Virus record (IMG/VR): IMGVR_UViG_3300009093_000034
Coordinates: 186,001 to 250,000 of that record
DNA length: 64,000 nt
Direction: 5' to 3' (one strand)
The notes under the pieces are model-generated. The model searched no databases. It was not told where the DNA came from and saw nothing but the letters and a program-made list of their open reading frames with translations. Shown piece after piece: positions 14,391 through 36,249 of the stretch. Each line of letters begins with the position of its first letter. Within the stretch, counting starts at the first letter, position 1. The translations under genes were made by a program, and so were the position numbers.

Positions 14391-15868
14391 CAGGCCGTAC
14401 TTTCTATGAACGGCCAAGAGTCTATCGCGCCACTTAACGTGTCATCAATATGACAGGCGCGGTGAGTATTGCAAATGTAGTACGTTTCACCCTTAACTAT
14501 TGACTTCCAAACAGCGAGCTCAGGATGGCGCTTTCCATCTAGACCATAAAAGTTCCAGATAGCGCCAGCAGCTCTTACCTTTTTAGCTTCCTCTTTATCT
14601 AAAGGAGTCTTGTGTTTCTCAAGAGTCTCCCAACGAGGATGCTTTCTTTTTGTCTTCTCTTCAAGATTATAGATCACATCATTGTCTGGAAAAGTGATCC
14701 AAAAAGCTGTGTATTTAGGAATACCAAAAGCTTCTTTTGTTTCAGAACCTGGAATTTTGTCTCCAATCATCTTCATGAATCTTCGATACAAAGATAGCTT
14801 TCCCTTCTCTTGAGTTTTACAGCTAAAAGTAATTCCATGGACAGTAGCATCAATCTCCGCTAGTTCTTTGATGAAGATAAAAAGTTCTTGTTTGATGACT
14901 GTAAACAACTTTCCAACGATAGAAAAATCCGATCTTTTGATCATGTCGTACATATCAGATCTAGCGTCCATCTTGCTATCATAAAACTCTACTGAGATTA
15001 TGTGAGAGACTGGGTTCAAGTAAAGTTCAATTATTATCTCTACATCACCATGAATGAACTCTACTTTCTTAGTTCTAGGATATTCATCCTCGTCAATGAT
15101 CGTCAACTCAACATCATCTAGAGTAGCATCAAGCATCTCAACAAGTCTAGCAGACTCATCAAACAACTCTTTCACAGTCTTGTTGTAAGCCTTAACTTCT
15201 TTACTATGGCTTCGGCTAGGTGAACCATCAAACAAGCCAACGATCCTAGGTTCTCCGTCTACCACAGCAAATGAGAAGGTGACAGGATCTTGCCAGTCTC
15301 CACCTGCTCTAAACTGAAGGTAGTCATCACCAACATAGACCATGTCGCAGTTCTCAAGATCTAGTTCTTTTGGGAAACCAGGGAGATCTTTGAGGTGATA
15401 GTGTCCATCTTGATGGTAGATCTTATTGAAGATCTTCATGAACTCTGGATCATCTGTCTTGAGCTTGGTGCTTTCATGAAGTTTTTTGGAGTTAGCGTAA
15501 GCATTATCCATTGGATCATCAGAAGACTTAAGACCAAGTCCATTCAGTCCAACCATGTTCTCAGGAGCAAAGCCTGAGAAGTTTCCAGACATTCCTACTC
15601 CAACACTCGCGTCCTCGGCCAATTGGTCGGGCAATAAGAACCCATGTTCTCTGAAGATCGGGATCAAGAGGTCATAGTCTCTCAACTCAGTTCCGCACTC
15701 TTTGTGACAGAACTCACAGTCAACGTAGATGTCGTTAGAGTCTAGATCTGTGACATGACCGCCATGATAGTTTCCAGGTGTGATGGTCTCCCAGTAGTAA
15801 AGACCTTCTTTTGCACCAAGGTCAGGTCGACGAGCATAGAGTTTGGCGATCTTGTTTGAGATTGACAT
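14390..15868 (-). CDS. Modular acidic protein, putative head internal polyprotein; one copy of a ~140-aa repeated domain
   Basis: EMLDATLDDV...VGKLFT...LYRRFMKM domain shared with neighbour; L-x-E sites between modules. Confidence 0.55.
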   Translation of the reverse strand: MSISNKIAKLYARRPDLGAKEGLYYWETITPGNYHGGHVTDLDSNDIYVDCEFCHKECGTELRDYDLLIPIFREHGFLLPDQLAEDASVGVGMSGNFSGFAPENMVGLNGLGLKSSDDPMDNAYANSKKLHESTKLKTDDPEFMKIFNKIYHQDGHYHLKDLPGFPKELDLENCDMVYVGDDYLQFRAGGDWQDPVTFSFAVVDGEPRIVGLFDGSPSRSHSKEVKAYNKTVKELFDESARLVEMLDATLDDVELTIIDEDEYPRTKKVEFIHGDVEIIIELYLNPVSHIISVEFYDSKMDARSDMYDMIKRSDFSIVGKLFTVIKQELFIFIKELAEIDATVHGITFSCKTQEKGKLSLYRRFMKMIGDKIPGSETKEAFGIPKYTAFWITFPDNDVIYNLEEKTKRKHPRWETLEKHKTPLDKEEAKKVRAAGAIWNFYGLDGKRHPELAVWKSIVKGETYYICNTHRACHIDDTLSGAIDSWPFIESTA

Positions 15869-17217
15869 TATGGTAGGTCCTCGTGAACAATGAACTTTGA
15901 TTTTGGATGATGATCAGCATACCACTCAGTTTGACCATCGCCTTCTGAGTACTCGTCTATCCCACAATCATAAATAGTATCCACGATGTCAGAGAGCTCA
16001 TTTAGGATAGAAACAGCTTCTTGAATTGGATGCTTAGAGTTTTTGCTAAAGGTGTAACCAGTAGTTTTGTTGAGATCAAAGCCTGCAGCAAATGCCATTC
16101 CAGCTTCTCCTTTATCAATGTCATCAAACGAAGTGTGAGCATTTTGATTTCTAGTAGGTCCACCATTTTTCCAGTAGTTTGGAGAGATAGATTCTTGAGT
16201 TCTAGGTGGAATAAGAGTAATATCAAACAGTATCTCTTCATTGGCAGCTGGACTTTCATGCCAGTACCACCCTAGTTTATCTGCAATCATCTTTGCAAAT
16301 CGACGATAAAGAACAGTTCTACTTGGTTCTCCAACTTTGGATGTGAAATAAATGTTATCTACTTCAGGTTTTTCTTTCAAAATTTGTTCAAGTTTTTTGG
16401 AAATGAATGTAAAAAGTTTGAACATGATGCCTGGATTGTCTCTAGGATGAAGATCGTAACCAGAAGTAACTGAGTCTCTAAAGTTAATTGATATGGTATC
16501 TGGAAATCCAGAGTCAAAGTTAACAGTTAGATAAGCTCCACCATACTGAAACTTGTAAAAGTGTCTTTCAGGATAAGGCTTGATGATAGTGACATCGTCA
16601 AGAGATGAATCTAGAGTTTCTTTTAGAGTAGATTTTTTCATCTTTTCTTTTTTAGAAGAAAAATCAATGTAAAAAGCAATGTTATCTGATCTAGTTGTTT
16701 CTGTCACATTACCTTCAAATTTTTTAGCTAACATCTTAGAAAATGTTCTATAGAGTTTTACTCTAGAAGATTCAGAAGACTTACTCAAAAACTTGATCTC
16801 ATTAATTCTTTGTCCTTCTTCACTATCCATGATAGACATCAGTTCTTTGTTGATAAACGTAAATAATTTTCCAACTAAAACAGGATCATTTCTTGGAATT
16901 AACTCGTAGCCTTCGTATTCTCCAGGAGGATTAAAATCTGAAAAAGTAATTGAGATCAAATGAGTATCATTGTAACTTTCTATAGCAAAATTTATCTCTA
17001 AGGTTATATCTTTGTAATCAAAAAAATATTTTTTGATGACCCATGAGTCTGTAGGACGAAGATCTGGCATTTTCTCAATTTTAACATCGTCTAAAGATGC
17101 ATCGAGCATCTCAACAATTCTATCCATATTCTCAAAGAGTTGATCAATGCTTTCTTTTTTGGTCTTTGGTTTCTTTCCAAAGGTTCTTTTTTCTTGGAGT
17201 TGATTAGAAGACGGCAT
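15868..17217 (-). CDS. Modular protein with two copies of the same ~140-aa domain, putative head internal polyprotein
   Basis: EMLDASLDDV...KLFTFI...SR..LYR.F.KM.A.K occurs twice; AT-rich DNA. Confidence 0.55.
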   Translation of the reverse strand: MPSSNQLQEKRTFGKKPKTKKESIDQLFENMDRIVEMLDASLDDVKIEKMPDLRPTDSWVIKKYFFDYKDITLEINFAIESYNDTHLISITFSDFNPPGEYEGYELIPRNDPVLVGKLFTFINKELMSIMDSEEGQRINEIKFLSKSSESSRVKLYRTFSKMLAKKFEGNVTETTRSDNIAFYIDFSSKKEKMKKSTLKETLDSSLDDVTIIKPYPERHFYKFQYGGAYLTVNFDSGFPDTISINFRDSVTSGYDLHPRDNPGIMFKLFTFISKKLEQILKEKPEVDNIYFTSKVGEPSRTVLYRRFAKMIADKLGWYWHESPAANEEILFDITLIPPRTQESISPNYWKNGGPTRNQNAHTSFDDIDKGEAGMAFAAGFDLNKTTGYTFSKNSKHPIQEAVSILNELSDIVDTIYDCGIDEYSEGDGQTEWYADHHPKSKFIVHEDLP

Positions 17218-18094
17218 TTGGTAACATCCATGGCTTAATTCCCCCAGAGTAGTGGAGAAGTTTTACATTTTTATACTCTATGAGATCATCACTTGAAAGA
17301 ACGTCTTGAAGATAAGCATCTGCACTAACAGCAGGAATATAGGAACCTAATTGCATAGCTCCGTTGAACTCTTGCTCAACAACGAGATAGTACTCAGTGT
17401 GAAAGTTGTATCGAAGAGGGAGGACCGCATAAGGAAACATCTCGCCTAGTTTTTGGATGAACCAACCATCAAACAACCAATCTGGCATTGTTTGAATGTA
17501 AGGAGTTGGGGAGTTTCCTCTTAAGACTGGATCTTTGTCAGAATTTTGGTACAAAGCCTGAATCTCTGTAGCATGATTTCTCCAGTAGGTAAGGTTGAGA
17601 AGAAGGACACCTGAGTGAATGTTCTCCATGTCTCCAATGATGAGTTTTCCGTTGATCTCACCCTCAGGAGTTGGACTATAATCATGAGAAGCACCAAAGA
17701 TCTTGTTGGTAAGATCTGTGGTCCAAAGACCAGTCAAATCTCCTTTACAGAGAACATCAGTATCAAGGTAGATGACTTTTGAGATCTCGTCAGGAAGAGA
17801 ACAGTAAAGCCAAAGTCGGTAATAGCTTGGTTCCGACCAGCTTCTGCTGTGAATGAAGTCAGGAGTGTAACCGCCAAAGTTCAAGGGAAAGTAATTCAAG
17901 ATCCAACCAGCGTTGTTGGCGATCATGACTAGATCCGACCAATCTTCATCTTGAGTCACGTCGTCTCTAGACACGAAACAAACAGAGTGTTTTCCAGGGT
18001 TGTTCTTGATCAAGCTCTTTAAGGAAGCTTTAGAGTACCTGAGGTAAGATGAGTCAACTGTGTAACAAAAAACCATGGTTAGATCTCCCTCCAT
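17204..18094 (-). CDS. Glycosyltransferase family 8 (GT-A fold)
   Basis: YYRL...KVIYLDTDVL..GDL..LW, HSGVLLLNL..WR, YN, LLHYSG.IKPW motifs. Confidence 0.9.
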   Translation of the reverse strand: MEGDLTMVFCYTVDSSYLRYSKASLKSLIKNNPGKHSVCFVSRDDVTQDEDWSDLVMIANNAGWILNYFPLNFGGYTPDFIHSRSWSEPSYYRLWLYCSLPDEISKVIYLDTDVLCKGDLTGLWTTDLTNKIFGASHDYSPTPEGEINGKLIIGDMENIHSGVLLLNLTYWRNHATEIQALYQNSDKDPVLRGNSPTPYIQTMPDWLFDGWFIQKLGEMFPYAVLPLRYNFHTEYYLVVEQEFNGAMQLGSYIPAVSADAYLQDVLSSDDLIEYKNVKLLHYSGGIKPWMLPNAVF

Positions 18095-19138: not shown

Positions 19139-19678
19139 TTGGCGTTTAGTGAAGAAAGATATGATATAGGTATGCAAGCCTTACAAAAATTTGTAATGCC
19201 TCAAATAGAGATGTTTGGGTACGAGATACACGGTTCGTTAAGGAAGTCTGTTCAAGATTTACACTACATAACAGACGGGGTCATTACTGACGACACAGGC
19301 CAAACTAAGATCCTGTTTGAACACAAGCATGGAAAAAATGATGAGACTACAACTTTAGTAGTTAGGTACAAACAAAAAAAGTGGCCAACTTCAGACTTTG
19401 ACAAGATCATCTCAAATCATCCTAAGATTTTAGCTAGGTTACCTAGACTTTGGTTTGTTAGAACTTATGGTTCTGTTGACCATGGATCTGGAAACATAAC
19501 TTGGGTCTCTGGTAAAGACGTTTTTGATTGGTGTAACAAGAATAAAGAGCGCGTTATGAAATCTTTTAAGGAAAAAGATGAAACATTGTTCACCTTAAAG
19601 ATCGAAGATTGGTTCTTATTGATCCCTCTCTCAGAACTTAAGGTCGAGAAGATTCCTCCTTGTCTAACTAATTCTTAA
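19139..19678 (+). CDS. PD-(D/E)xK-like endonuclease (tentative)
   Basis: TDGVITDD...ILFEHKH resembles the D...ExK catalytic pattern; divergent stand-alone gene. Confidence 0.4.
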   Translation: MAFSEERYDIGMQALQKFVMPQIEMFGYEIHGSLRKSVQDLHYITDGVITDDTGQTKILFEHKHGKNDETTTLVVRYKQKKWPTSDFDKIISNHPKILARLPRLWFVRTYGSVDHGSGNITWVSGKDVFDWCNKNKERVMKSFKEKDETLFTLKIEDWFLLIPLSELKVEKIPPCLTNS

Positions 19679-19691
19679 TCAGGAGAAGAAG

Positions 19692-20360
19692 ATGCCACGA
19701 AGGTCTGTGACCGAGACTCTAGACAGTCTTGAAAAGAAACTAGACAAATTACTAGAGACTGAGGTCTCAGATCTCGAATCAAAGGTCTTGAAAGGCGCTT
19801 GGAGAAAGAAGAAGCATGATGATCTTTCTTCAAACCTAAAAGACAATCATGGTTGGTTTAGCGTTGAAGACGTCATGTCTGCACCTGAAGACACCAAAAA
19901 AGGCATCGATTCTCTTATCAAGAAAGGTCTTTTGACCATCTTAACTGATGAAGAAAATTCAGATGACCATGAGTTCAAGCCCACTGAAAGAGGTCTTGAG
20001 GTCATGTACGACTTGTTTGACAAGTCTGGAAAATCCAATCGAGCTGGGGCTGGAAAGAAATTCCCAGTTAGAAAAGATCCAAAAGCTCCAGTCACCAAAG
20101 ATGACATTGCTAGAGTTGGAGAGTTTCTTCAAGAGTTTTATCCTGAGATTGATTGGGACTTTGAAGAAGGCCTTGGTCTTGGTCGCCGAGGTCCAAAGTT
20201 CGCCTTCATCTTTGTCAATGGTATCTCTCATAACAAAGACGAGATTCAAACCACAGCCAAGAGAATTGTTCTTGATTTCAAAGGTCAAGGTTTCTTAAAC
20301 ACCACTGAAGACATCAGTTTTGAGAATGGCTTTGCTGTGATTGAGTTGGAGGTGTGGTAA
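19692..20360 (+). CDS. Hypothetical protein, possible head internal protein
   Basis: AGGAG SD, ACTAATT upstream, N-terminal V-T-E/L-L-E sites. Confidence 0.55.
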   Translation: MPRRSVTETLDSLEKKLDKLLETEVSDLESKVLKGAWRKKKHDDLSSNLKDNHGWFSVEDVMSAPEDTKKGIDSLIKKGLLTILTDEENSDDHEFKPTERGLEVMYDLFDKSGKSNRAGAGKKFPVRKDPKAPVTKDDIARVGEFLQEFYPEIDWDFEEGLGLGRRGPKFAFIFVNGISHNKDEIQTTAKRIVLDFKGQGFLNTTEDISFENGFAVIELEVW

Positions 20361-21730
20361 TGAAGTTGACCAAGTTCATCCCATTAAGAGAAGACGATCA
20401 TACCATTCCTCATGAAGAGAACTTCTATGACTTGAACCCAGATCTTCAGATCGGTCCTAAGTTTGAAACTGGGGTTGATGAGTATTGTATTGAGTGTGGA
20501 GAACCTATGGATCCTCCAGACATCGATGAAAGTGGCAACCTGGTTTGTCCACATTGTGGCTTTGTAGAAGAGGATGACGTAGAAAGATGGCTTCGCTCTC
20601 GAACTGGCACTAATTACATAAGAGAGGCTATCAGAATGGCACGAGAACTAACCAAATTCATCTCGATTGACGAACAAGTCAGTCCTAACTACAAGATGGT
20701 GTCAGGAAAGAACCAAACTACACCACAAGGCAACGGAAGTGTTGCTACACCACTTAAGAAACAAGGATCCCCATCGGATCCAGCATCTTCCCCAGGTGGA
20801 CTTCCTAAGGGCGGAAAGCTCTCTGGAAAGTTTACCAACCACAGTGAGCTTAGTACTTACAACAGCAAGGAACCAATCACAGAGTCTACCAAGCTAGAAG
20901 AAACAACTCACGATGATTTTGTTGCCAACTATGGCGTTGAAATTAAGAGAGCTATTAAGAACTTGAAGTCTATCGGAAAGATCCTCAACGCTCTTCCTGA
21001 AGATTCTCCTTTCTTTGCTAAGTGGGAACAGGATCCTCATGATCCATTGAAACTAGCTGACCAAGTTATCGCTCAAGCTATTGAATCTTGGGCCGGGTCT
21101 GCTAATGACGTTTCAGTTGGAGAGATCGCAAGAGCAGCTGTTGCTAATCAAACTAGAAATGGAACTGAACCACAACAGGTTCTCTTCACCATTGAAGACC
21201 TTCTTAAGTACCTTGAGAGAAACACCAAGGGACTTGAGAAAGCCGTTGTTCATGAGTCCGTAGAAGTTTTGAACGAAAAAGAATCTCCTGAAAGCCATGG
21301 TCCTGGAGAAGATCCAGAGAAGCTTGCTGATGCTAGAGCATATGCTTATGCTAAGCTCGTTGACGACTTCGGTCTTAATGATGATGAAGCCTTTGAAGCT
21401 GTTGCATCAGCAGATGTTGGTCCATCAAGAGACCTTGATGACATGATTGATGCCATCGTTTGGGACGTAGTTGTCAACGACATCTCCCCATCCGACTTCT
21501 CTGAATCACAAAAGACACTTACAACCTTCAAACCTCTCAATGAGGATGGTGCCGCAGGCCGAACCACTGAGTATGCTACTGAGTCCAAGGAGATTGGAAA
21601 AGATTCTAAGACCCCTCTTCCAAAAGGTGGAGAGCTCTCTTCTGAGTTCAACAACGGAGAGAAGATTTCTCGTGGTCAAGAGATGATGCCAGAGAGTGGA
21701 AAGTTCACCAAGTTCACCCCTCTCAAATAA
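20360..21730 (+). CDS. Acidic modular protein with Zn-ribbon and repeated (L/F)TxFxx(L/I)xE motifs, putative head polyprotein
   Basis: CIEC...CPHC; four TKF/TTF motif copies; LPKGG.LS..F.N repeated twice. Confidence 0.6.
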   Translation: MKLTKFIPLREDDHTIPHEENFYDLNPDLQIGPKFETGVDEYCIECGEPMDPPDIDESGNLVCPHCGFVEEDDVERWLRSRTGTNYIREAIRMARELTKFISIDEQVSPNYKMVSGKNQTTPQGNGSVATPLKKQGSPSDPASSPGGLPKGGKLSGKFTNHSELSTYNSKEPITESTKLEETTHDDFVANYGVEIKRAIKNLKSIGKILNALPEDSPFFAKWEQDPHDPLKLADQVIAQAIESWAGSANDVSVGEIARAAVANQTRNGTEPQQVLFTIEDLLKYLERNTKGLEKAVVHESVEVLNEKESPESHGPGEDPEKLADARAYAYAKLVDDFGLNDDEAFEAVASADVGPSRDLDDMIDAIVWDVVVNDISPSDFSESQKTLTTFKPLNEDGAAGRTTEYATESKEIGKDSKTPLPKGGELSSEFNNGEKISRGQEMMPESGKFTKFTPLK

Positions 21731-21740
21731 GAAGGAAATA

Positions 21741-23471
21741 ATGGATTCTATTCTAAGAGAAGCTACTCTCCCCAAGTACGGTGTTTCGTTATCGCCAACT
21801 CGAGATCACGGTCAATTCATTGACTTTTTAGATACTCAATACAAGGTCCAAACAGCATCAGAATGGTTTAGAGATCCTGATCTAAAGAAATTAGAAGACA
21901 AAGTTAGGGATTGGTTTGTAGATAGAGAGATCACTTATGACATCTCTTCTATAAGAGGAACAAGAGACTTTTTGAAAACTTTATCCTTTCCAGACAATTG
22001 GGAAGATCTTCTAGACTCTTGTGATGTTTCAGTTATAACAGCTAAAGATTTACGATCAGCTATAGCTCTTGCTCGTAGTGAATCCTATGATGAGAGTACA
22101 AAAAAGACACTTACTCCCTTCAAAACTATGAACTCTTTCAAGTCTCTCCACGAAAATTGGACAGATGACTATGAAGATGGGGACATCGACGAACACTGTG
22201 TTGGTTGTGGTGCTCCTATTGATGATTACTTTGAAAGTGAGAACGGTGAGTTTGTTTGTCCTATTTGCGGTTTCAACGTAGGACCAAACGAAGAAGACCA
22301 AGAGTACTTTGACGAACTAGAAGTTCCAGGTGCCAGCATTGGTCGAGAACGTCCAGGTCTCTCAGACGAACAACAAGCTTACATTGATGCATGGGGTGAA
22401 CATGATCCAGATGACATCAACTTCGATGATTTTGAAGACTTCGAGTGGATGGAAGAATCAACACATCCCATCCTAAGAAAAAGATACTTTCAGGTTATGC
22501 TTGAACTAGATGCTCTCATGAGAACAGAAAAGACACCTCGAGTTCAGAAGCAAATTGAGATTCTTGAAAAAGAATTTGATGAACTAGAACGCGAGTTTGA
22601 TGCTGAACAACTTAAAGAAGCTTCAAGGAAGCCATTACCTTCGTGGGAAGAGCTTCAAGAAGTCTTAGATATCATCTCAAATGGAAAATGGTATCTTGTT
22701 GAAGATGATATCAAAAATTGGCCAAAGGTTCTTAAAGACAAAGTAGTCTCTCTAGCTGAGATGTTTGAGGAGATCTACAACATTAACTTTGGAGCTTCTG
22801 AATCTGGTGATCGTCGAAGACTTTCACTTGAGAATCAGATAGCTAGAAAGTGGGGATCGATCGAGAGACTAGTTAAGTCTCGTGTGTCTGAGTCTGCCCA
22901 ACAAAACATCCATGATGTAGAAAAGACTGAAGAACAACTTCACGTTGATATTGACATGGATGGAGAGAAGGGAGAATCTGCTGAACATCGAAAGAAGGTG
23001 TTAGGAGAGTCTAGAAGCGGATACCTTCTTAGCTTAACTCTTAAGTTCAAAAAAGGAGAAATTTCTATTTGGAAGGTTAGAGAAGCTCAAGCAGAAGCTG
23101 GGTGGACTGATACTAAATTGGAAACTTTTTGGAAAAAGTGGTCAAGTAAGATAGATCCTAAATCTGGATTTATTCGTACCCCAATCTTAGACGAATCCTG
23201 GTATAACAACTCAGAAGATCTTAATGAGATCAGTGAGATCCTTCAAATGCTTCCACCTGGTGAGATCAACAAGCTTAGAAAAGAACTAGATCTAGATGAT
23301 TGGGAGCTCTCTGTTTTGTCAGGACTTACAGTCAATAAACCTTTGGCTGAGAGTACCACACCTATTGTCCAGGACGACTCAGAAGCGTCTCCAGTTCAAG
23401 GCAATGGTGATGAGATAGGTGATTACTACAATGCTTACAAAGAAGCAGTTAAACTAGTAGATAGACTGTAA
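21741..23471 (+). CDS. Acidic modular protein with Zn-ribbon, putative head polyprotein (start re-assigned to 21741)
   Basis: AAGGA SD; CVGC...CPIC homologous to neighbour; many (L/I/V)-x-E-(S/A) sites. Confidence 0.6.
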   Translation: MDSILREATLPKYGVSLSPTRDHGQFIDFLDTQYKVQTASEWFRDPDLKKLEDKVRDWFVDREITYDISSIRGTRDFLKTLSFPDNWEDLLDSCDVSVITAKDLRSAIALARSESYDESTKKTLTPFKTMNSFKSLHENWTDDYEDGDIDEHCVGCGAPIDDYFESENGEFVCPICGFNVGPNEEDQEYFDELEVPGASIGRERPGLSDEQQAYIDAWGEHDPDDINFDDFEDFEWMEESTHPILRKRYFQVMLELDALMRTEKTPRVQKQIEILEKEFDELEREFDAEQLKEASRKPLPSWEELQEVLDIISNGKWYLVEDDIKNWPKVLKDKVVSLAEMFEEIYNINFGASESGDRRRLSLENQIARKWGSIERLVKSRVSESAQQNIHDVEKTEEQLHVDIDMDGEKGESAEHRKKVLGESRSGYLLSLTLKFKKGEISIWKVREAQAEAGWTDTKLETFWKKWSSKIDPKSGFIRTPILDESWYNNSEDLNEISEILQMLPPGEINKLRKELDLDDWELSVLSGLTVNKPLAESTTPIVQDDSEASPVQGNGDEIGDYYNAYKEAVKLVDRL

Positions 23472-23474
23472 ATT

Positions 23475-23504
23475 AAAAAGGTCCCTTTCGGGACCTTTTC
23501 TTTT
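23475..23504. terminator. Bidirectional rho-independent terminator
   Basis: AAAAGGTCCC-TTTC-GGGACCTTTT between convergent genes. Confidence 0.85.
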
Positions 23505-24462
23505 ACCTGTTCAACTTGACTGCCAACATTGCATCGATTGCTCTTCTAGCAGGCTCAATTAACTCTTCAGCCACAGTCACCTCAGGCAACTCGTTCTGAA
23601 GAGCAAGAAGAACCTTAGGAAGGGTGATCTTCTTCATGTGGGGACAAAGGTTACAGGGCCTGATGAACTCGGTGTCAGGGAAGTTGATGGCTACGTTGTC
23701 GGCCATCGAACACTCGGTGATTAACGCGATCTTCTCAGGCTTGTTCTTCTCCACATACTTGATCATCTGTGCCGTCGAACCAGCAAAGTCTGCAGCTTCA
23801 ACAACAGGAACAGGACATTCAGGGTGAGCGATGACCATCAGCTTCTTTCCATGCTGTTCACGAAGAGTCGTGATCTGTTCAGGAGTGAAGAGCTCATGGA
23901 CCATGCAGCTTCCGTTCCAAAGATGAAGTTTCTTCTTGGTCAGTTTCTGGATGTTTCTTCCAAGGTACTGGTCAGGGATGAAGATGATCTCGTCAGCATC
24001 CAAGCTCTCAACAACCTCGAGAGCGTTACCCGATGTGCAGCAAACATCCGTGACTGCCTTAACCGCAGCACTCGTGTTAACGTAGGTGACGACAGGAGCA
24101 CCAGGATGTTGTCTCTTCATCTCCAAAACGTCTTCAGCTGTGATGCCTTCACTGAGTGAACAACCAGCAGCCAAGTCAGCGATCAGAACCTTCTTGGTAG
24201 GGTTGAGGATCTTCACCGTCTCGGCCATGAAGTGAACACCACACATCACGATGATGTCAGCATCCGTGTTCACAGCTTCCTTTGCCAAAGCAAGAGAATC
24301 ACCAACGATGTCAGCGATCCCATGGAAGATGTCTGGGGTCATGTAGTTGTGGGCCAAGATAAGAGCGTTCTTCTCTTTCTTCAGCCGGTTGATCTCATCG
24401 ATGATGGGACCAATGATGGCCCACTCGACGTCGGGCACAAAGTTCTTAAGTTTGGGATTCAT
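23503..24462 (-). CDS. nadA: Quinolinate synthase NadA (start re-assigned to ATG 24462)
   Basis: ILAHNY, GDSL, CGVHFMAET, GCSL, TYVNTSA, CCTSGNA, GSCMVH, AHPEC, CPHMKK with three Fe-S cysteines; AGGA SD before MNPKL. Confidence 0.97.
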   Translation of the reverse strand: MNPKLKNFVPDVEWAIIGPIIDEINRLKKEKNALILAHNYMTPDIFHGIADIVGDSLALAKEAVNTDADIIVMCGVHFMAETVKILNPTKKVLIADLAAGCSLSEGITAEDVLEMKRQHPGAPVVTYVNTSAAVKAVTDVCCTSGNALEVVESLDADEIIFIPDQYLGRNIQKLTKKKLHLWNGSCMVHELFTPEQITTLREQHGKKLMVIAHPECPVPVVEAADFAGSTAQMIKYVEKNKPEKIALITECSMADNVAINFPDTEFIRPCNLCPHMKKITLPKVLLALQNELPEVTVAEELIEPARRAIDAMLAVKLNR

Positions 24463-24473
24463 GATGTCCTGCC

Positions 24474-24494
24474 TTATGCTCAATCTGAGCATAA
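24474..24494. promoter_or_regulatory. 21-bp inverted repeat matching the NadQ operator consensus
   Basis: TTATGCTCA-ATC-TGAGCATAA, between the -10 element and the nadA start; fits ttATRCTCannntGAGYATaa (consensus recalled from memory). Confidence 0.75.
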
Positions 24495-24584: not shown

Positions 24585-24971
24585 TTAGACAATGGCCATC
24601 TTGATGACTTTGTACTTAGCTGTCTCAAGTCGCTCAATCAATCTTTGATTAATTGCTGAAGCCAAAAGAGTATCAACAACGTTGTCAATCTCTGTATGCT
24701 TGTCATCATGACTAAAAGAACTAAAAGAATAAATTCTTTCTCCAGTGACATCAGGACATTCATTTTGAATTATGGCTTTCAGTTCCCATCTTTCAAAAAG
24801 AGTTCCTGTTCCAATTTTGTCACAGTCACTTTTGTTATGTTCATTCTTGTTGTAGATAACTTCCATACCATCCAACATAAGATTGAAGCACTTAGCTCCC
24901 TTCTCTGTGGCCTCGGAAACTCCTCTCCACCGACCAAGTTCAAACCGACCAAAAGCTGTTCGTGTAGCCAT
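24585..24971 (-). CDS. Hypothetical protein, paralog A of tandem pair
   Basis: RFELG..RGVS..T..GA.CFN and EIDNV..T.LASA...YKV shared with 25025-25348. Confidence 0.75.
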   Translation of the reverse strand: MATRTAFGRFELGRWRGVSEATEKGAKCFNLMLDGMEVIYNKNEHNKSDCDKIGTGTLFERWELKAIIQNECPDVTGERIYSFSSFSHDDKHTEIDNVVDTLLASAINQRLIERLETAKYKVIKMAIV

Positions 24972-25024: not shown

Positions 25025-25348
25025 TTAAACGTATTCCCAGTTTACCTTGTACATGCCTTCGAAAACTCTGTCGATGACCTTCTGTCGAACAGCAGAAGCA
25101 AGGATGGTTCCCATGACATTGTCAATCTCTCTGGACTTGTCTTCTCCAAAGAGGTAAGGACGTTCTCCGGTAATACCGTGTCCAAATTGTTCAATGTACG
25201 ATTTGAACTCTTGGCGAGAGAAGGTATCACTATCGATATCTTCAAGAAGATCTAAGAACTCATTAAAGCAACGAGCTCCTTCAATAGTTTCATCGCTTAC
25301 TCCTCTGTTTTTACCTAATTCAAAACGAGGAAAAGATTTTCGTGACAT
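25025..25348 (-). CDS. Hypothetical protein, paralog B of tandem pair
   Basis: See paralog A; own TGGATATT...AAGGAG leader. Confidence 0.75.
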   Translation of the reverse strand: MSRKSFPRFELGKNRGVSDETIEGARCFNEFLDLLEDIDSDTFSRQEFKSYIEQFGHGITGERPYLFGEDKSREIDNVMGTILASAVRQKVIDRVFEGMYKVNWEYV

Positions 25349-34056: not shown

Positions 34057-34977
34057 ATGATCCCTCTACCATATGAGGGGTTTTCGATCTCAGAAGACGC
34101 TACTCAAGTTAAGACCCCGGAAGGGGTCTTTTCTTTGATTCCCGGAAAGAACTTCTATTTTGTCAACCCCAACACCGGCACAAAAACATTTGCCAAGCCT
34201 AACGAGCTCCTTGAAAGAGCTAAGAGATTTGTCGAGACTGGTGGAGTTCTTCCACCAAAGAAAGTTCCGGCTAAGAAATCAGCTCCAAAGAAAAAAGTCC
34301 AAAAAGTCAAGGTTCCTACTCCGGCTCAGCTTGAAAGAGCTCGCCTAAAGAAAGAACGAGAAGACAAGAAGAAGGCCAAAGAGGCCGAGAAAGTTGCCAA
34401 GGCTCACAAGCGCGAGATGAGAAAGAAGGCAGCAGAAGAGAAGAAGATCAAGGTTGCTAAGAGAAAGCATCAGCTTCTTCCAGACTTCGTAGCTGACAGG
34501 TTCAGAGAACAGTTGGCCAACAGACGAAAGCGTGAGTCTGGAGAAAATCCTAAGGCTCACGTTTGGAACGGTTTGTTCATCGACTACGAGAAGACCAATC
34601 GAGTCACAGAGCTTGTAGCTAACGCTGCTCTCGGAGTCTCTGTAATTCACATCGTAGGTCCTCAGAACTGGCGAGATGGTTACTTCTTCTACAATCCCAT
34701 CACGGAAAAGTACACGAAGTTCATCTTCGAGATCCACAAGCCCGGCATTGGAAATGACAAGATCATTTGGCCTACGGATCTTGGTGGAGAACATCTTCTT
34801 GGTGCCAAGCACCAAGAACTTCGATTGAAGAAAGAGATGGCAAGGCTCACAACGAAGAGAACTGCTGCTCCTTCTGAAAATCCTGAAGACTCGGTGAAGA
34901 ACGTTAGTAAGAGAAAGATCGCCAAGTTGCATGAGACTCTTGGAGTTTCTCAGCAAGAGGAAAATGAAGATGAGTGA
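34057..34977 (+). CDS. Lys-rich hypothetical protein
   Basis: 306 aa with histone-like K/A-rich centre. Confidence 0.65.
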   Translation: MIPLPYEGFSISEDATQVKTPEGVFSLIPGKNFYFVNPNTGTKTFAKPNELLERAKRFVETGGVLPPKKVPAKKSAPKKKVQKVKVPTPAQLERARLKKEREDKKKAKEAEKVAKAHKREMRKKAAEEKKIKVAKRKHQLLPDFVADRFREQLANRRKRESGENPKAHVWNGLFIDYEKTNRVTELVANAALGVSVIHIVGPQNWRDGYFFYNPITEKYTKFIFEIHKPGIGNDKIIWPTDLGGEHLLGAKHQELRLKKEMARLTTKRTAAPSENPEDSVKNVSKRKIAKLHETLGVSQQEENEDE

Positions 34978-35578
34978 TTGGGCTGCGAAGTTTGAAGACA
35001 AAGAGAACCACATCAAAGGTACAAAAGGCTACCTCCATAGTGTGATCCGGTGTTTGAAAAAAGAAGCAGAAGACATTCAAGGGAAGCTGACGTTTTCTGA
35101 GGATCGTTACAACACTCTCTTTAGTTTGTTTCCTACAGACTTCTCAAGAAAGCATCACTACATGTACCTCGGAAAGATGCTGATGTTCGTAGCTCTCTAC
35201 GCTCTTATGGCCTTACTTTTTCCTGGACCTAACAACATGGACATTCGAGGGATCACTTGCCTCTTTGGAGGCATGACGATCTTCGTTCATCTTCTTCATA
35301 TCTACCAGTCGACCAGCCAGATGAAGACACTTTGGTCTCTTCTTAAGGCAAAAGAAAAGTATCTTGATGACATGAAGAAACTTGATAAAGGAAACGAAGC
35401 TTTCCTCAACGAGATCAAGATATTTAAGGAAAAGGAAATCAAGAACATCCTGGCTTGGACCGACTTTTACTCTCGGTACAATAACTTTGTAAGTGATCTT
35501 GAAGAGACTCAGATCTGGAATGAAGTCGATCTGAAAGACGAGTACAAGAAGGCAAAAGATGCGGGTGTTCATTTTTGA
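34970..35578 (+). CDS. Membrane protein with coiled coils
   Basis: Two TM segments; GAGG SD. Confidence 0.6.
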   Translation: MSDWAAKFEDKENHIKGTKGYLHSVIRCLKKEAEDIQGKLTFSEDRYNTLFSLFPTDFSRKHHYMYLGKMLMFVALYALMALLFPGPNNMDIRGITCLFGGMTIFVHLLHIYQSTSQMKTLWSLLKAKEKYLDDMKKLDKGNEAFLNEIKIFKEKEIKNILAWTDFYSRYNNFVSDLEETQIWNEVDLKDEYKKAKDAGVHF

Positions 35579-35924
35579 GGACATGGAAGATAGACTCAAG
35601 TTCTTCAAAAAGATCTTAGTCGACCATGATCTTCAACACACAGACCAGATTGAGAAAGCAAAGAAGATCCTTCTTAATGAGAAGTGGGACTTTGTTTTTC
35701 TTGATCACGATATGGAAGAAAGGTTCATGGACTCTAAGACCACTCAGAACAATGGCTATCAGCTGGCCAAGTGGATCGTAGAGAACAAGATCAAGATCGA
35801 ACAGATCATCATTCATTCCATGAACTCTGTCGGAGCTGGAAACATTCGTGAGGCTTTGAGAGAGTCTTACCCGACAGTGAACTATGTTCCGTTCAATGTT
35901 CTTCGACAAAGCTTAAGAGGTTAA
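35559..35924 (+). CDS. Cyclic-phosphate-processing receiver-like domain protein
   Basis: FIFED..DR, FLDHDM, GYQLAKWI, IIHSMNSVGA.NI motifs. Confidence 0.75.
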   Translation: MRVFIFEDMEDRLKFFKKILVDHDLQHTDQIEKAKKILLNEKWDFVFLDHDMEERFMDSKTTQNNGYQLAKWIVENKIKIEQIIIHSMNSVGAGNIREALRESYPTVNYVPFNVLRQSLRG

Positions 35925-35928
35925 AACC

Positions 35929-36249
35929 ATGATCAAGAGATCATTTACTGGCGCGAGAAGCATCGTCATCAAGAATGGCCAAGTCATCATCGACGGAAAG
36001 AAGATCGAACTGGAAGATGTTCCCGAGATCACTTTGGAAATCTCGGGTGACGCTCTGAGAATCGACGCCGACAATGTTCAGGAGATCACTGTCAACGGAA
36101 ACGTGACAGAAGATGTCAAGACCATGAGTGGAAACATTCGAGTTCAGGGTTCAGTCGGCGGAAACGTCAAGAGCATGAGTGGAGACATTCATTGCGGTGA
36201 CGTTGCCGGAAAGGTTGAGACCATGAGCGGAGATATTACAAGGAAGTAG
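35929..36249 (+). CDS. Beta-helix repeat protein (DUF4097/bactofilin-like)
   Basis: V.(T/S)MSG.I repeated three times. Confidence 0.7.
   Translation: MIKRSFTGARSIVIKNGQVIIDGKKIELEDVPEITLEISGDALRIDADNVQEITVNGNVTEDVKTMSGNIRVQGSVGGNVKSMSGDIHCGDVAGKVETMSGDITRK

What the first reader, a model, noticed from the sequence alone, without database searches (positions are those of the whole stretch)
20360..23471. Putative head polyproteins with internally repeated capsid-targeting-like motifs
Seen: MKLTKFIPLRE (20360), ELTKFISIDE (~20645), KTLTTFKPLNE (~21512), KFTKFTPLK (C-terminus), KTLTPFKTMNSFKSLHE (~22104), and many (L/I/V)-x-E-(S/A/T) sites (ILREA, IREA, ITES, LEET, VHES, LKEA, VSES, LGES, LDES, LAES) bounding short unrelated modules. 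Both genes share a DE.C..CG.P.D.....E.G..VCP.CGF Zn-ribbon, and LPKGG.LS..F.N is repeated. Known: T4 internal proteins carry one N-terminal targeting peptide (MKTYQEFIAE) removed by gp21 cleavage after Glu. Inference: these are multi-cargo precursors cut into several small proteins injected with the DNA, possibly an anti-defence payload.
Basis: partly seen in the sequence, partly recalled or inferred. Interest (0 to 1): 0.7.

Follow-up and report, generated by a model that had tools for sequence, protein, structure and literature searches.

The report
Modular protease-cut phage precursor proteins
Two neighbouring genes of an uncultured 306-kb soil phage encode acidic, cassette-built proteins whose cassettes are separated by a repeated basic peptide and by Leu/Ile-x-Glu junctions of the kind cut by the phage's own T4-like head protease. 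They are therefore probably head-targeted precursors cut into small pieces, but nothing yet shows that they are in the virion.

Summary
Gene A (window 20360-21730, 456 aa) carries four copies of a K-x-L-T-x-F-x-P-L-x-E peptide. Gene B (21741-23471, 576 aa) carries a doubled copy. The peptide occurs nowhere else among 441 ORFs of this 305,833-bp phage. A and B share only this peptide plus a CxxC...CxxC zinc ribbon.

- The phage has a T4 gp23-like capsid protein and a protease domain whose only significant fold match is T4 gp21, which cuts after L/I-x-E.
- In the single known relative, cassettes are gained, lost or replaced. Four of seven boundaries fall exactly on hydrophobic-x-E|S/A/T sites (P<1e-5).
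- One cassette of A is a confidently folded helical domain with no fold match. Its 89 relatives are mostly small proteins that carry short T4 targeting-peptide-like leaders ending in L/I-N-E-S/G just before the domain.
- [LI]REA is over-represented 4-fold in the proteome. It sits in the capsid protein N-terminus, the protease, A and B.
- The operon follows a gene-start motif also found before head and tail genes.

Against: there is no virion or RNA evidence, the neighbours are replication genes, site enrichment within A and B is modest, and the "anti-defence payload" idea is untested. This is a new variant of a known kind.

The parts
19667..19673 (+). Gene-start-proximal motif ACTAATT ('class 1'), 25 nt upstream of the ATG of orf222. 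It is the likely promoter element of the orf222-A-B operon.
   Evidence: 57 of 89 genomic copies of ACTAA[TC]T lie within 60 nt upstream of a start codon, although that space is 4.3% of the sequence. Copies stand before head-module, tail-fibre and baseplate genes. The relative has one 22 nt before its A gene.
19692..20360 (+). orf222, the first gene of the operon. Its stop overlaps the ATG of A (TAATG). It is also mosaic relative to its 320-aa homologue in the relative.
20360..21730 (+). Gene A, 456 aa, pI 4.65
20360..20392 (+). Motif copy 1 (MKLTKFIPLRE), an N-terminal basic leader ending in L-R-E
   Evidence: conserved in the relative
20486..20563 (+). Zinc ribbon of A (CxxC...CxxC, residues 43-68)
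20609..20638 (+). Internal ACTAATTA + GAGAGG + ATG (Met93), overlapping the YIREA site. A possible internal start that would give a product beginning MARELTKFISIDE.
   Evidence: This is the peak of nucleotide and codon identity with the relative: 10 of 12 identical codons against 50% overall, and 0.91 nt identity. The motif is conserved at L003 8876. The inference is not significant after correcting for the number of windows.
20645..20674 (+). Motif copy 2 (ELTKFISIDE)
20801..20839 (+). LPKGGKLSGKF repeat 1, inside a disordered stretch that is nearly invariant in the relative
20903..21256 (+). Helical domain (residues 182-299), flanked by ITE|S, LEE|T and VHE|S
   Evidence: 89 profile hits all fall on this module. 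AF2 gives pLDDT 91 and pTM 0.82. No fold match in PDB, BFVD, VIA-wide, the ESM Atlas or AFDB clusters.
21257..21511 (+). Variable acidic cassette (residues 300-384), absent from the relative
   Evidence: boundaries VHE|S and FSE|S
21512..21544 (+). Motif copy 3 (KTLTTFKPLNE)
21617..21655 (+). LPKGGELSSEF repeat 2
21701..21727 (+). Motif copy 4 (KFTKFTPLK) at the C-terminus. In the relative this copy ends in L-E-E and is followed by a further 65-aa cassette.
21741..23471 (+). Gene B, 576 aa, pI 4.5
21750..21764 (+). ILREA at residues 4-8 of B, the same pentapeptide type as SELREA near the N-terminus of the capsid protein
21762..22097 (+). N-terminal cassette of B (residues 8-119), absent from the relative, ending in YDE|S
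22104..22154 (+). Doubled motif of B (KTLTPFKTMNSFKSLHE). It is N-terminal in the relative's B.
22197..22274 (+). Zinc ribbon of B (residues 153-178)
22287..22892 (+). Variable region (residues 183-384), replaced in the relative, ending in VSE|S
22893..23009 (+). Conserved acidic island (residues 385-423), nearly identical in the relative, ending in LGE|S
23010..23195 (+). Basic cassette (residues 424-485) inserted between LGE|S and LDE|S, absent from the relative
23196..23468 (+). C-terminal part: a conserved WYNN module ending in LAE|S, then a divergent tail. The relative carries DUF7678 here instead.
23476..23499 (.). Bidirectional hairpin terminator that closes the operon

Best explanation
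A and B are modular precursor proteins that are substrates of the phage's own T4 gp21-type prohead protease.

Proposed sequence of events:
1. They are made from the orf222-A-B operon, behind a gene-start motif shared with head and tail genes.
2. The short basic K-x-L-T-x-F-x-P-L-x-E peptides act as capsid-targeting or docking propeptides. They are N-terminal in both genes of the relative and reiterated internally here. They bring the chain into the assembling prohead core.
3. The protease then cuts after Glu in (L/I/V)-x-E|(S/A/T) junctions.
4. Cutting separates a zinc-ribbon piece, a helical domain and several other 40-200-residue cassettes.
5. Some of these pieces stay in the head and could enter the cell with the DNA.

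Because each cassette is flanked by the same junction, cassettes can be inserted, deleted or swapped without disturbing the rest.

Shown: the motif and its restriction to A and B; the cassette architecture and its boundaries; the gp21-fold protease and gp23-like capsid protein; the folded helical domain and its leader-bearing relatives.

Inferred: targeting, cleavage, presence in the virion, injection, and any function after injection.
For: 1. A T4-type head machinery is present.
- The capsid protein matches PF07068 Gp23 above the cut-off.
- The 663-aa protein at genome 34119-36110 has a weak PF03420 hit.
- The AF2 model of its conserved domain has T4 gp21 (5JBL) as its only significant PDB match: E=9e-6, probability 1.0, TM 0.54-0.59.
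- gp21 cuts after L/I-x-E, and T4 internal proteins carry 10-19-residue N-terminal targeting propeptides (PMC9026906).

2. Every motif copy ends in (L/I)-x-E.

3. Cassette boundaries against the only relative fall on junction sites. Four of seven lie exactly on hydrophobic-x-E|S/A/T (random mean 0.11, P<1e-5). Six of seven lie within 3 residues (P=3e-5).

4. The helical cassette has 89 relatives.
- Almost all are preceded by [LIVF]-[NK]-E-[SGT].
- The stand-alone ones carry leaders such as MKLKTFKQLNES, MKIKLFNQINES and MYTKFNDFKKINEG.
- Unrelated neighbouring genes on two of those contigs carry similar leaders.
- The multi-module relatives hold 137 such sites against 66 expected.

5. [LI]REA occurs 11 times against 2.5 expected in the proteome. 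Four copies are in the head module, including the capsid protein N-terminus and the protease, plus one each in A and B. [LI][RT]E[AS] occurs 30 times against 12.5 expected. An L-x-E just upstream of the protease domain is conserved across the clade. The protease-scaffold protein is the ORF richest in [LIV]xE[SAT]; B ranks 9 and A ranks 16 of 441.

6. The ACTAA[TC]T motif stands before head, tail-fibre and baseplate genes and before this operon. In the relative it stands directly before A.

7. The junction stretches flanking the helical domain have lower model confidence (pLDDT 53-66), as linkers would.
Against: - There is no proteomic, structural or transcript evidence. No RNA run was listed.
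- The genes lie 170 kb from the head module, next to SbcC-like, DnaB-like and nadA genes.
- The repeated peptide is absent from every other ORF, so it is not a general targeting signal in this phage.
- A matrix built from the leaders of other phages does not pick it out, so the likeness to those leaders and to the T4 targeting peptide is generic.
- Site enrichment inside A and B is only p about 0.02-0.03.
- The comparison rests on one relative, and the boundary positions were read from MAFFT alignments.
- A and B are strongly acidic, whereas from memory the T4 internal proteins are basic.
- The conserved x-N-E-S before the helical domain could be part of the fold rather than a cleavage site.
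- It is not shown that ACTAA[TC]T is a late promoter. It contains TAA and also precedes nadA.
Confidence: 0.5

Rival explanations
1. A and B are non-virion, intracellular multi-domain proteins made for host take-over or as accessories of transcription, replication or recombination. The zinc ribbon binds nucleic acid or a polymerase. The reiterated basic peptide and the invariant disordered stretches (YKMVSGKNQTTPQG, LPKGG.LS..F) are short linear motifs that bind a host or phage hub protein several times over. The x-E-S tetrapeptides are simply inter-domain linkers at which recombination shuffles cassettes.
For: The neighbours are an SbcC-like ATPase, a DnaB-like helicase and nadA. The best, sub-threshold, match of the ribbon is the TFIIB type. 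The motif is private to A and B. Both proteins are acidic and largely disordered: the Atlas model of A has pLDDT 0.43. This is common for early phage proteins (stated from memory). The disordered segments are almost invariant between the two phages, as binding motifs would be.
Against: This reading does not explain several things. The linkers have the specificity of the phage's own protease and recur at the capsid protein N-terminus and in the protease. Homologues of the helical cassette carry short removable-looking leaders. The motif is N-terminal in both genes of the relative. The operon carries the element seen before structural genes.
Confidence: 0.25
2. A and B do enter the prohead and are cut, but as sacrificial core or scaffold-like assembly proteins comparable to T4 gp22, gp67 and gp68. 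Their fragments are mostly expelled before DNA packaging. They would be assembly aids, not an injected payload.
For: T4 core proteins are cut at many L/I-x-E sites into small fragments that leave the head (PMC9026906). SPN3US propeptides are also cut at several sites (PMC10052503). A and B are acidic, like scaffolds. Many sites lie in disordered sequence.
Against: Essential assembly proteins are usually conserved and sit in the head module. A and B have one relative among 5.8 billion proteins and are absent from four IMG/VR phages that share the protease, although those records are only 37-76% complete. Their cassettes come and go between close relatives. They contain folded domains (zinc ribbon, helical domain) that are not expected of a scaffold. 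The phage already has a protease-coiled-coil fusion and a 416-aa Ala/Lys/Glu-rich protein in the head module as scaffold candidates.
Confidence: 0.15
3. The pattern is a by-product of internal duplication and composition. The motif copies are decayed repeats with no present function, and the coincidence of x-E-S with boundaries is an alignment artefact.
For: There is only one relative. The patterns were defined after seeing the data. E, S, L and K are common residues in these proteins.
Against: All motif copies and the ribbon are conserved between phages whose remaining sequence has diverged or been replaced. The shuffle tests give P<1e-4. The junction rule also holds in about 70 independent family members.
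Confidence: 0.03

Closest known systems
T4 internal proteins IPI, IPII, IPIII and Alt, with their capsid targeting sequences and gp21 processing
   Same: A short N-terminal propeptide ends in L/I-x-E. The phage has a gp21-fold protease and a gp23-like capsid protein. The bodies behind a constant leader are highly variable and fast-evolving. The genes lie outside the head gene cluster. Alt is trimmed at both ends (PMC9026906), as A would be at its C-terminal motif.
   Different: There is no sequence homology to any T4 internal protein. The leader-like peptide is reiterated inside long chains, four times in A, instead of standing once at the N-terminus. Several unrelated cassettes are strung into one polypeptide. 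The proteins are acidic. The peptide is private to two genes rather than shared by a set of head proteins. Targeting and cleavage are untested.
Multiply cleaved head, inner-body and ejection proteins of phiKZ, 201phi2-1 and SPN3US
   Same: These are jumbo phages with a diverged gp21-like protease that cuts after Glu at several sites per substrate. Paralogous substrates are encoded side by side (gp53/gp54 of SPN3US).
   Different: Those proteases prefer S/A-x-E. That motif is not enriched in A or B (14 against 10.6 and 9 against 12.7 expected). In those phages it is mostly a long N-terminal propeptide that is diced and discarded, leaving one mature body. Here the chain looks like a string of separate bodies. 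There is no homology.
T4 prohead core and scaffold proteins gp22, gp67 and gp68
   Same: They are acidic and are cut at many L/I-x-E sites into small peptides.
   Different: Core proteins are conserved, essential and encoded in the head cluster. A and B are nearly orphan, have variable cassettes, contain folded domains and lie elsewhere in the genome.
Polyvalent proteins of phages and conjugative elements (Iyer et al. 2017; recalled from memory, not checked here)
   Same: Several unrelated modules sit in one chain, the module content varies between relatives, and the proposal is delivery with the DNA followed by proteolytic release.
   Different: Polyvalent proteins are recognised by known enzymatic or anti-defence domains and often by their own peptidase. 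None of the modules here matches a known family.

Membership tests
T4-type internal proteins bearing a capsid targeting sequence | N-terminal propeptide of about 10-19 residues ending in L/I-x-E | tested here: met
   A begins MKLTKFIPLRE, with L-R-E at residues 9-11. B begins MDSILRE, a shorter 7-residue leader. Both orthologues in the relative begin with the K/T-L-T-x-F motif. The feature is defined in PMC9026906.
T4-type internal proteins bearing a capsid targeting sequence | The phage encodes a gp21-family prohead protease | tested here: met
   The Foldseek top and only significant PDB hit of the modelled domain is T4 gp21 (5JBL): E=9e-6, probability 1.0.
T4-type internal proteins bearing a capsid targeting sequence | Sequence homology to IPI, IPII, IPIII or Alt | tested here: not met
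   No Pfam or PHROG family matches A or B. tblastn against 50,697 phage records found nothing.
T4-type internal proteins bearing a capsid targeting sequence | The protein is in the head, the propeptide is removed, and the peptide suffices to target a foreign protein | not testable with these tools
   This needs virion mass spectrometry and fusion experiments. The phage is uncultured and comes from a soil or rhizosphere metagenome.
Peptidase S77 (T4 gp21), for the genome 34119-36110 protein | Pfam PF03420 match above the gathering score | tested here: not met
   15.7 bits against a cut-off of 27, E=1.3e-3. One 69%-identical homologue does carry a precomputed PF03420 hit.
Peptidase S77 (T4 gp21), for the genome 34119-36110 protein | gp21 / herpesvirus-protease fold | tested here: met
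   TM 0.54-0.59 over about 140 residues to 5JBL; the next hit has E=0.12. The model is only moderate, with pLDDT 68.7.
Peptidase S77 (T4 gp21), for the genome 34119-36110 protein | Catalytic His and Ser in equivalent positions | tested here: inconclusive
   An invariant His (in LADHP) and an invariant Ser triplet (in GFSSSG) are seen in 26 homologues. Their superposition on the catalytic residues of gp21 was not examined.
TFIIB-type zinc ribbon (PF08271) | Four Cys as CxxC...CxxC and a score above the gathering cut-off | tested here: not met
   The four cysteines are present in A and B. The scores are 19.0 and 17.4 bits here and 26.7 in the relative, against a cut-off of 29. It is a generic zinc ribbon, and assignment to TFIIB is not justified.
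phiKZ-like processed inner-body / ejection proteins | Several S/A-x-E cleavage motifs and homology to the phiKZ or SPN3US paralogue families | tested here: not met
   [SAG].E is not enriched in A or B. No PHROG hit.
DUF7678 (PF24726), carried by the relative's B | Pfam match | tested here: not met
   The domain is present in P0004 (55 bits) but absent from window B and from the whole genome. That C-terminal cassette differs between the two phages.

The most novel reading that the evidence does not exclude
A and B are 'plug-and-play' cargo polyproteins. They would be chains of unrelated small effectors, each flanked by a standard prohead-protease junction, with a reiterated targeting peptide. 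The phage could then load several proteins into the head from one gene and exchange single cassettes by recombination at the junctions. The fold-orphan helical domain, found in about 90 protein clusters of uncultured phages behind T4-like leaders, would be a new widespread class of packaged and injected protein. The internal promoter-like element plus Met93 would add a second, leader-first isoform.
Probability: 0.3. Interest if true: 0.75.

Novelty: new variant of a known kind. Interest (0 to 1): 0.55.

Why it matters
Head-packaged, injected proteins are the first phage products to meet host defences. In T4 they include a restriction-enzyme inhibitor (IPI) and an RNA-polymerase modifier (Alt). 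They are almost unknown in uncultured jumbo phages because they have no recognisable domains.

If the junction-plus-leader grammar seen here marks protease substrates, candidate packaged proteins could be read straight from metagenomic sequence. It would also show how such cargo evolves, by exchange of cassettes at protease sites. It would further offer natural targeting peptides and cleavable linkers for loading foreign proteins into large capsids.

If the rival is right, the reiterated peptide is instead a new multivalent binding motif of an intracellular phage protein.

Tried and rejected
- Known-family searches of the whole proteins and of ten separate modules found only sub-threshold generic zinc-ribbon hits. 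This covered Pfam, PHROGs, and Pfam at E<=1 on pieces.
- tblastn and blastn against 50,697 phage records gave no match for the A-B region, for A, or for a family member.
- Word-indexed searches of 5.8 billion proteins found one relative each for A and B.
- Scans of IMG/VR and of JGI metagenome contigs found no further relative.
- Four IMG/VR phages that share the protease hold neither the helical domain nor the motif-ribbon unit, but they are only 37-76% complete.
- The helical-domain model had no significant neighbour in PDB (Foldseek and VIA-wide), BFVD, the ESM Atlas or AFDB clusters.
- The ESM Atlas feature search for A and B gave nothing usable. The Atlas model of A is poor, with pLDDT 0.43.
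- I rejected the idea that the motif is a proteome-wide targeting signal, because no other ORF has it.
- I built a position matrix from the leaders of family members, expecting it to rank the window's motifs first in the proteome. It did not: they ranked 54, 187 and 200 of 90,221. The likeness is therefore treated as generic.
- phiKZ-type S/A-x-E specificity was rejected because the motif is not enriched.
- The HK97-type protease PF04586 is absent.
- A sequence search of the protease region against PDB found only designed helical repeats. The link to gp21 needed the fold comparison.
- No RNA run was listed for gene A. DNA runs from three other soil or rhizosphere studies hold fragments of the same phage at 100% identity, so they gave no variants.
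- No complex prediction was run. A transient enzyme-peptide pair with a moderate protease model was judged unlikely to give an informative verdict.

Full report
**What the window is.** The window is bases 186001-250000 of a complete 305,833-bp virus record with direct terminal repeats. It was assembled from a rhizosphere metagenome, and fragments at 100% identity occur in three further soil or rhizosphere runs. It has no nucleotide or protein match among 50,697 deposited phage genomes in the region studied.

**The genes.** The finding covers two co-directional genes.
- Gene A is 20360-21730 (456 aa). Its ATG overlaps the stop of the upstream orf222 as TAATG.
- Gene B is 21741-23471 (576 aa). 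The ATG at 21741 follows a good Shine-Dalgarno sequence, although the frame opens at a GTG at 21696.
- A strong bidirectional hairpin at 23476-23499 closes the unit.
- Neither protein matches any Pfam or PHROG family.

**Check of the observation.**
- The core T-x-F-x-[PSTK]-[LIM] occurs four times in A against 0.04 in composition-matched shuffles, and once in B.
- A stricter form occurs three times in the whole 441-ORF proteome (0.38 expected), all three in A.
- The motif copies are basic islands in otherwise very acidic proteins, with pI 4.65 and 4.5.
- A and B share nothing detectable except this peptide and a CxxC...CxxC zinc ribbon, which is 17/35 identical with E=2e-8.
- The ribbon's best Pfam match is the TFIIB type, but below the cut-off.
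- LPKGG.LS..F is duplicated in A.
- (L/I/V)-x-E-(S/A/T) sites are enriched only modestly: 5 against 1.7 expected in A, and 7 against 2.6 in B.

**The one relative and the cassette structure.** Searches of 5.8 billion proteins found a single homologue for each gene. Both lie side by side on a 14.7-kb contig (L003), again just upstream of the SbcC-like gene. The alignments are mosaic.

These parts are 80-100% identical:
- the motif copies;
- the ribbon;
- two disordered stretches of A;
- an acidic island of B (HDVEKTEEQLHVDIDMDGEKGESAEHR.KVLGES).

Whole cassettes differ:
- Residues 300-384 of A are absent from the relative.
- The relative's A has an extra 65-aa cassette after the last motif.
- B has an extra 119-aa N-terminal cassette.
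- B has a replaced 200-aa middle part.
- B has a 62-aa basic cassette inserted between VLGE|S and ILDE|S, where the relative reads VLGE|SWYNN.
- The relative's B ends in a DUF7678 domain that this genome lacks.

In the relative both proteins begin with the motif followed by the ribbon.

I scored the seven boundaries that can be placed on the window proteins. Four coincide exactly with a hydrophobic-x-E|S/A/T site (random mean 0.11, P<1e-5). Six lie within three residues (P=3e-5). Two caveats apply: there is only one relative, and the boundaries were read from MAFFT alignments.

**One cassette is a real, widespread domain.** A profile of A and its relative, searched against 1.84 billion representative proteins, gave 89 further hits. 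All fall on residues about 176-300 of A.
- With a 69-sequence alignment AlphaFold2 gives a confident all-helical model, with pLDDT 91 and pTM 0.82. Confidence is lower (53-66) in the flanking junction stretches.
- The model has no significant neighbour in PDB, BFVD, an exhaustive VIA-align pass, the ESM Atlas or AFDB clusters.
- The hits have no Pfam or PHROG family. The function is unknown.
- The way the domain is embedded is informative. In nearly all members it is immediately preceded by [LIVF]-[NK]-E-[SGT].
- In A the corresponding residues are K-L-E-E-T, directly before THDDF.
- Stand-alone members (110-130 aa) carry 10-20-residue leaders such as MKLKTFKQLNES, MKIKLFNQINES, MKHIKLFEGFLNES and MYTKFNDFKKINEG.
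- Multi-module members have further x-N-E-S sites between modules: 137 sites against 66 expected in 44 proteins.
- On two AT-rich contigs that carry such genes, unrelated neighbouring genes start with the same kind of leader, for example MKTLKTYKLFTEA and MLKLKKYNEFLFES. One of the contigs encodes a baseplate wedge protein, so it is a myovirus.
- This is the pattern of the T4 capsid targeting sequence. [quoted passage not shown]

**The phage has the matching protease.** The head module lies at genome 30-40 kb, outside the window.
- The 614-aa protein at 37881-39725 matches PF07068 (T4 Gp23) above the cut-off. Its likely start gives MSGGITGRMNSELREA....
- The 663-aa protein at 34119-36110 gave a weak PF03420 (gp21) hit.
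- Its residues 80-240 are 55-76% identical to hundreds of the 701 proteins that matched, some on contigs of up to 594 kb.
- A model of that domain (pLDDT 68.7) has T4 gp21 (5JBL) as its top and only significant PDB match: E=9e-6, probability 1.0, TM 0.54-0.59. The next hit has E=0.12.
- A His and a Ser triplet are invariant. I did not check their superposition on the catalytic residues.
- The rest of the protein is coiled-coil-like, and it is the ORF richest in [LIV]xE[SAT] in the genome, with 12 against 3.9 expected.
- An L-x-E 12-15 residues before the domain is conserved across the clade.
- Proteome-wide, [LI]REA occurs 11 times against 2.5 expected, and [LI][RT]E[AS] 30 times against 12.5.
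- The [LI]REA copies include the capsid protein N-terminus (SELREA), two in the protease protein, one in the 346-aa head-module protein, YIREA in A, and SILREA at residues 3-8 of B.
- The phiKZ-type S/A-x-E motif is not enriched, and an HK97-type protease is absent.

**Expression signals.** Two upstream motifs stand out.
- ACTAA[TC]T has 89 copies. Of these, 57 lie within 60 nt upstream of a start codon, which is 4.3% of the sequence space, with peaks 5 and 11 nt before the ATG.
- It precedes the head-module genes, a tail-fibre-like protein, a baseplate wedge protein and other large minus-strand genes at 269-295 kb. It does not precede the primase, SbcD, ribonucleotide reductase or DnaB genes.
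- One copy lies 25 nt before orf222, at window 19667.
- The relative has a different neighbour upstream, and there a copy lies 22 nt before A itself.
- I take this as a probable late or structural-class promoter element. That is an inference: the motif contains TAA and also precedes nadA.
- The second motif, TGAGATATTGTA with AAAAGTTT about 20 nt upstream, precedes mostly small genes.

**What argues against the head reading.**
- There is no direct evidence of virion association, and no RNA run was listed.
- The genes sit among replication and recombination genes.
- The peptide is private to A and B.
- A matrix built from other phages' leaders ranks the window's copies only 54th, 187th and 200th of 90,221 positions. 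The resemblance to those leaders and to MKTYQEFIAE is therefore one of general type (basic, aromatic, then L-x-E), not demonstrable homology.
- The conserved x-N-E-S could be a structural cap of the helical domain.
- The proteins are acidic.
- No module resembles a known anti-defence protein.

**Verdict.** The best reading (about 0.5) is that A and B are substrates of the gp21-like protease. On this reading they are head-targeted modular precursors cut at (L/I/V)-x-E junctions into small proteins.
- Whether the pieces are retained and injected, or expelled like T4 core fragments (rival, 0.15), cannot be told.
- An intracellular protein with a multivalent binding motif is the main alternative (0.25).
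- Compared with what is known, this is a new variant. T4 has one leader per small internal protein. The phiKZ group dices long propeptides. Here the leader-like peptide is reiterated within chains of exchangeable cassettes.

Noticed in passing
window 20609-20638 (inside gene A); L003 8876-8905: A copy of the gene-start motif ACTAATTA, a GAGAGG Shine-Dalgarno-like sequence and the ATG of Met93 lie inside A. This stretch is the maximum of nucleotide identity (0.91) and identical-codon use (10 of 12, against 50% overall) with the relative. It suggests an internal start giving a product that begins with motif copy 2 (MARELTKFISIDE). T4 gene 21 also has an internal start (PMC9026906). The signal is not significant after correcting for the number of windows.
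   Followed up: partly
genome-wide; in the window e.g. 19119 (-), 19667, 24499 (-), 25385 (-), 27780, 31463: ACTAA[TC]T is 15-fold concentrated in the 60 nt upstream of start codons, with sharp peaks 5 and 11 nt before the ATG. Many transcripts may therefore be leaderless or nearly so. It precedes head and tail genes.
   Followed up: partly
genome-wide, 45 copies; in the window e.g. 8878, 24518 (-), 25008 (-), 33709, 39495, 41659, 48713: A second upstream motif, TGAGATATTGTA, is preceded about 20 nt upstream by AAAAGTTT. It lies mostly before small genes and looks like a distinct (early or middle?) promoter class with an extended -10-like element.
   Followed up: no
window 23503-24492 (-), 24585-24971 (-), 25025-25348 (-): A full-length quinolinate synthase gene (NadA, PF02445, E=3e-113) lies between B and the SbcC-like gene, together with two small paralogous genes (43% identical, E=3e-27). 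This is an inserted block. In the relative, B is followed directly by the SbcC-like gene. nadA carries both upstream motif types.
   Followed up: partly
genome 34119-36110 (outside the window; L007 14119-16110): The gp21-fold protease is fused to a roughly 400-residue coiled-coil, scaffold-like region. The protease domain is 55-76% identical in hundreds of the 701 proteins matched, on contigs of up to 594 kb. The phage therefore belongs to a large clade of jumbo or huge phages with a protease-scaffold fusion.
   Followed up: partly
window 19692-20360 versus L003 6913-7875: orf222, the gene upstream of A, is itself mosaic. It shares its N-terminus and a central block with a 320-aa protein of the relative, which has an 85-aa insertion right after SSLE and further insertions.
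   Followed up: partly
window 15868-17217 (-): By eye, the 449-aa protein contains two similar halves (LDASLDDVKIEKMP... and LDSSLDDVTIIKPYP...), that is, an internal duplication. It sits next to a family 8 glycosyltransferase (17204-18094, PF01501).
   Followed up: no
L020 12372-14075: An AT-rich (27% GC) myovirus-like contig that carries a helical-domain gene also encodes a eukaryote-type topoisomerase IB (Topoisom_I_N + Topoisom_I + Topo_C_assoc). This is unusual for a phage.
   Followed up: no
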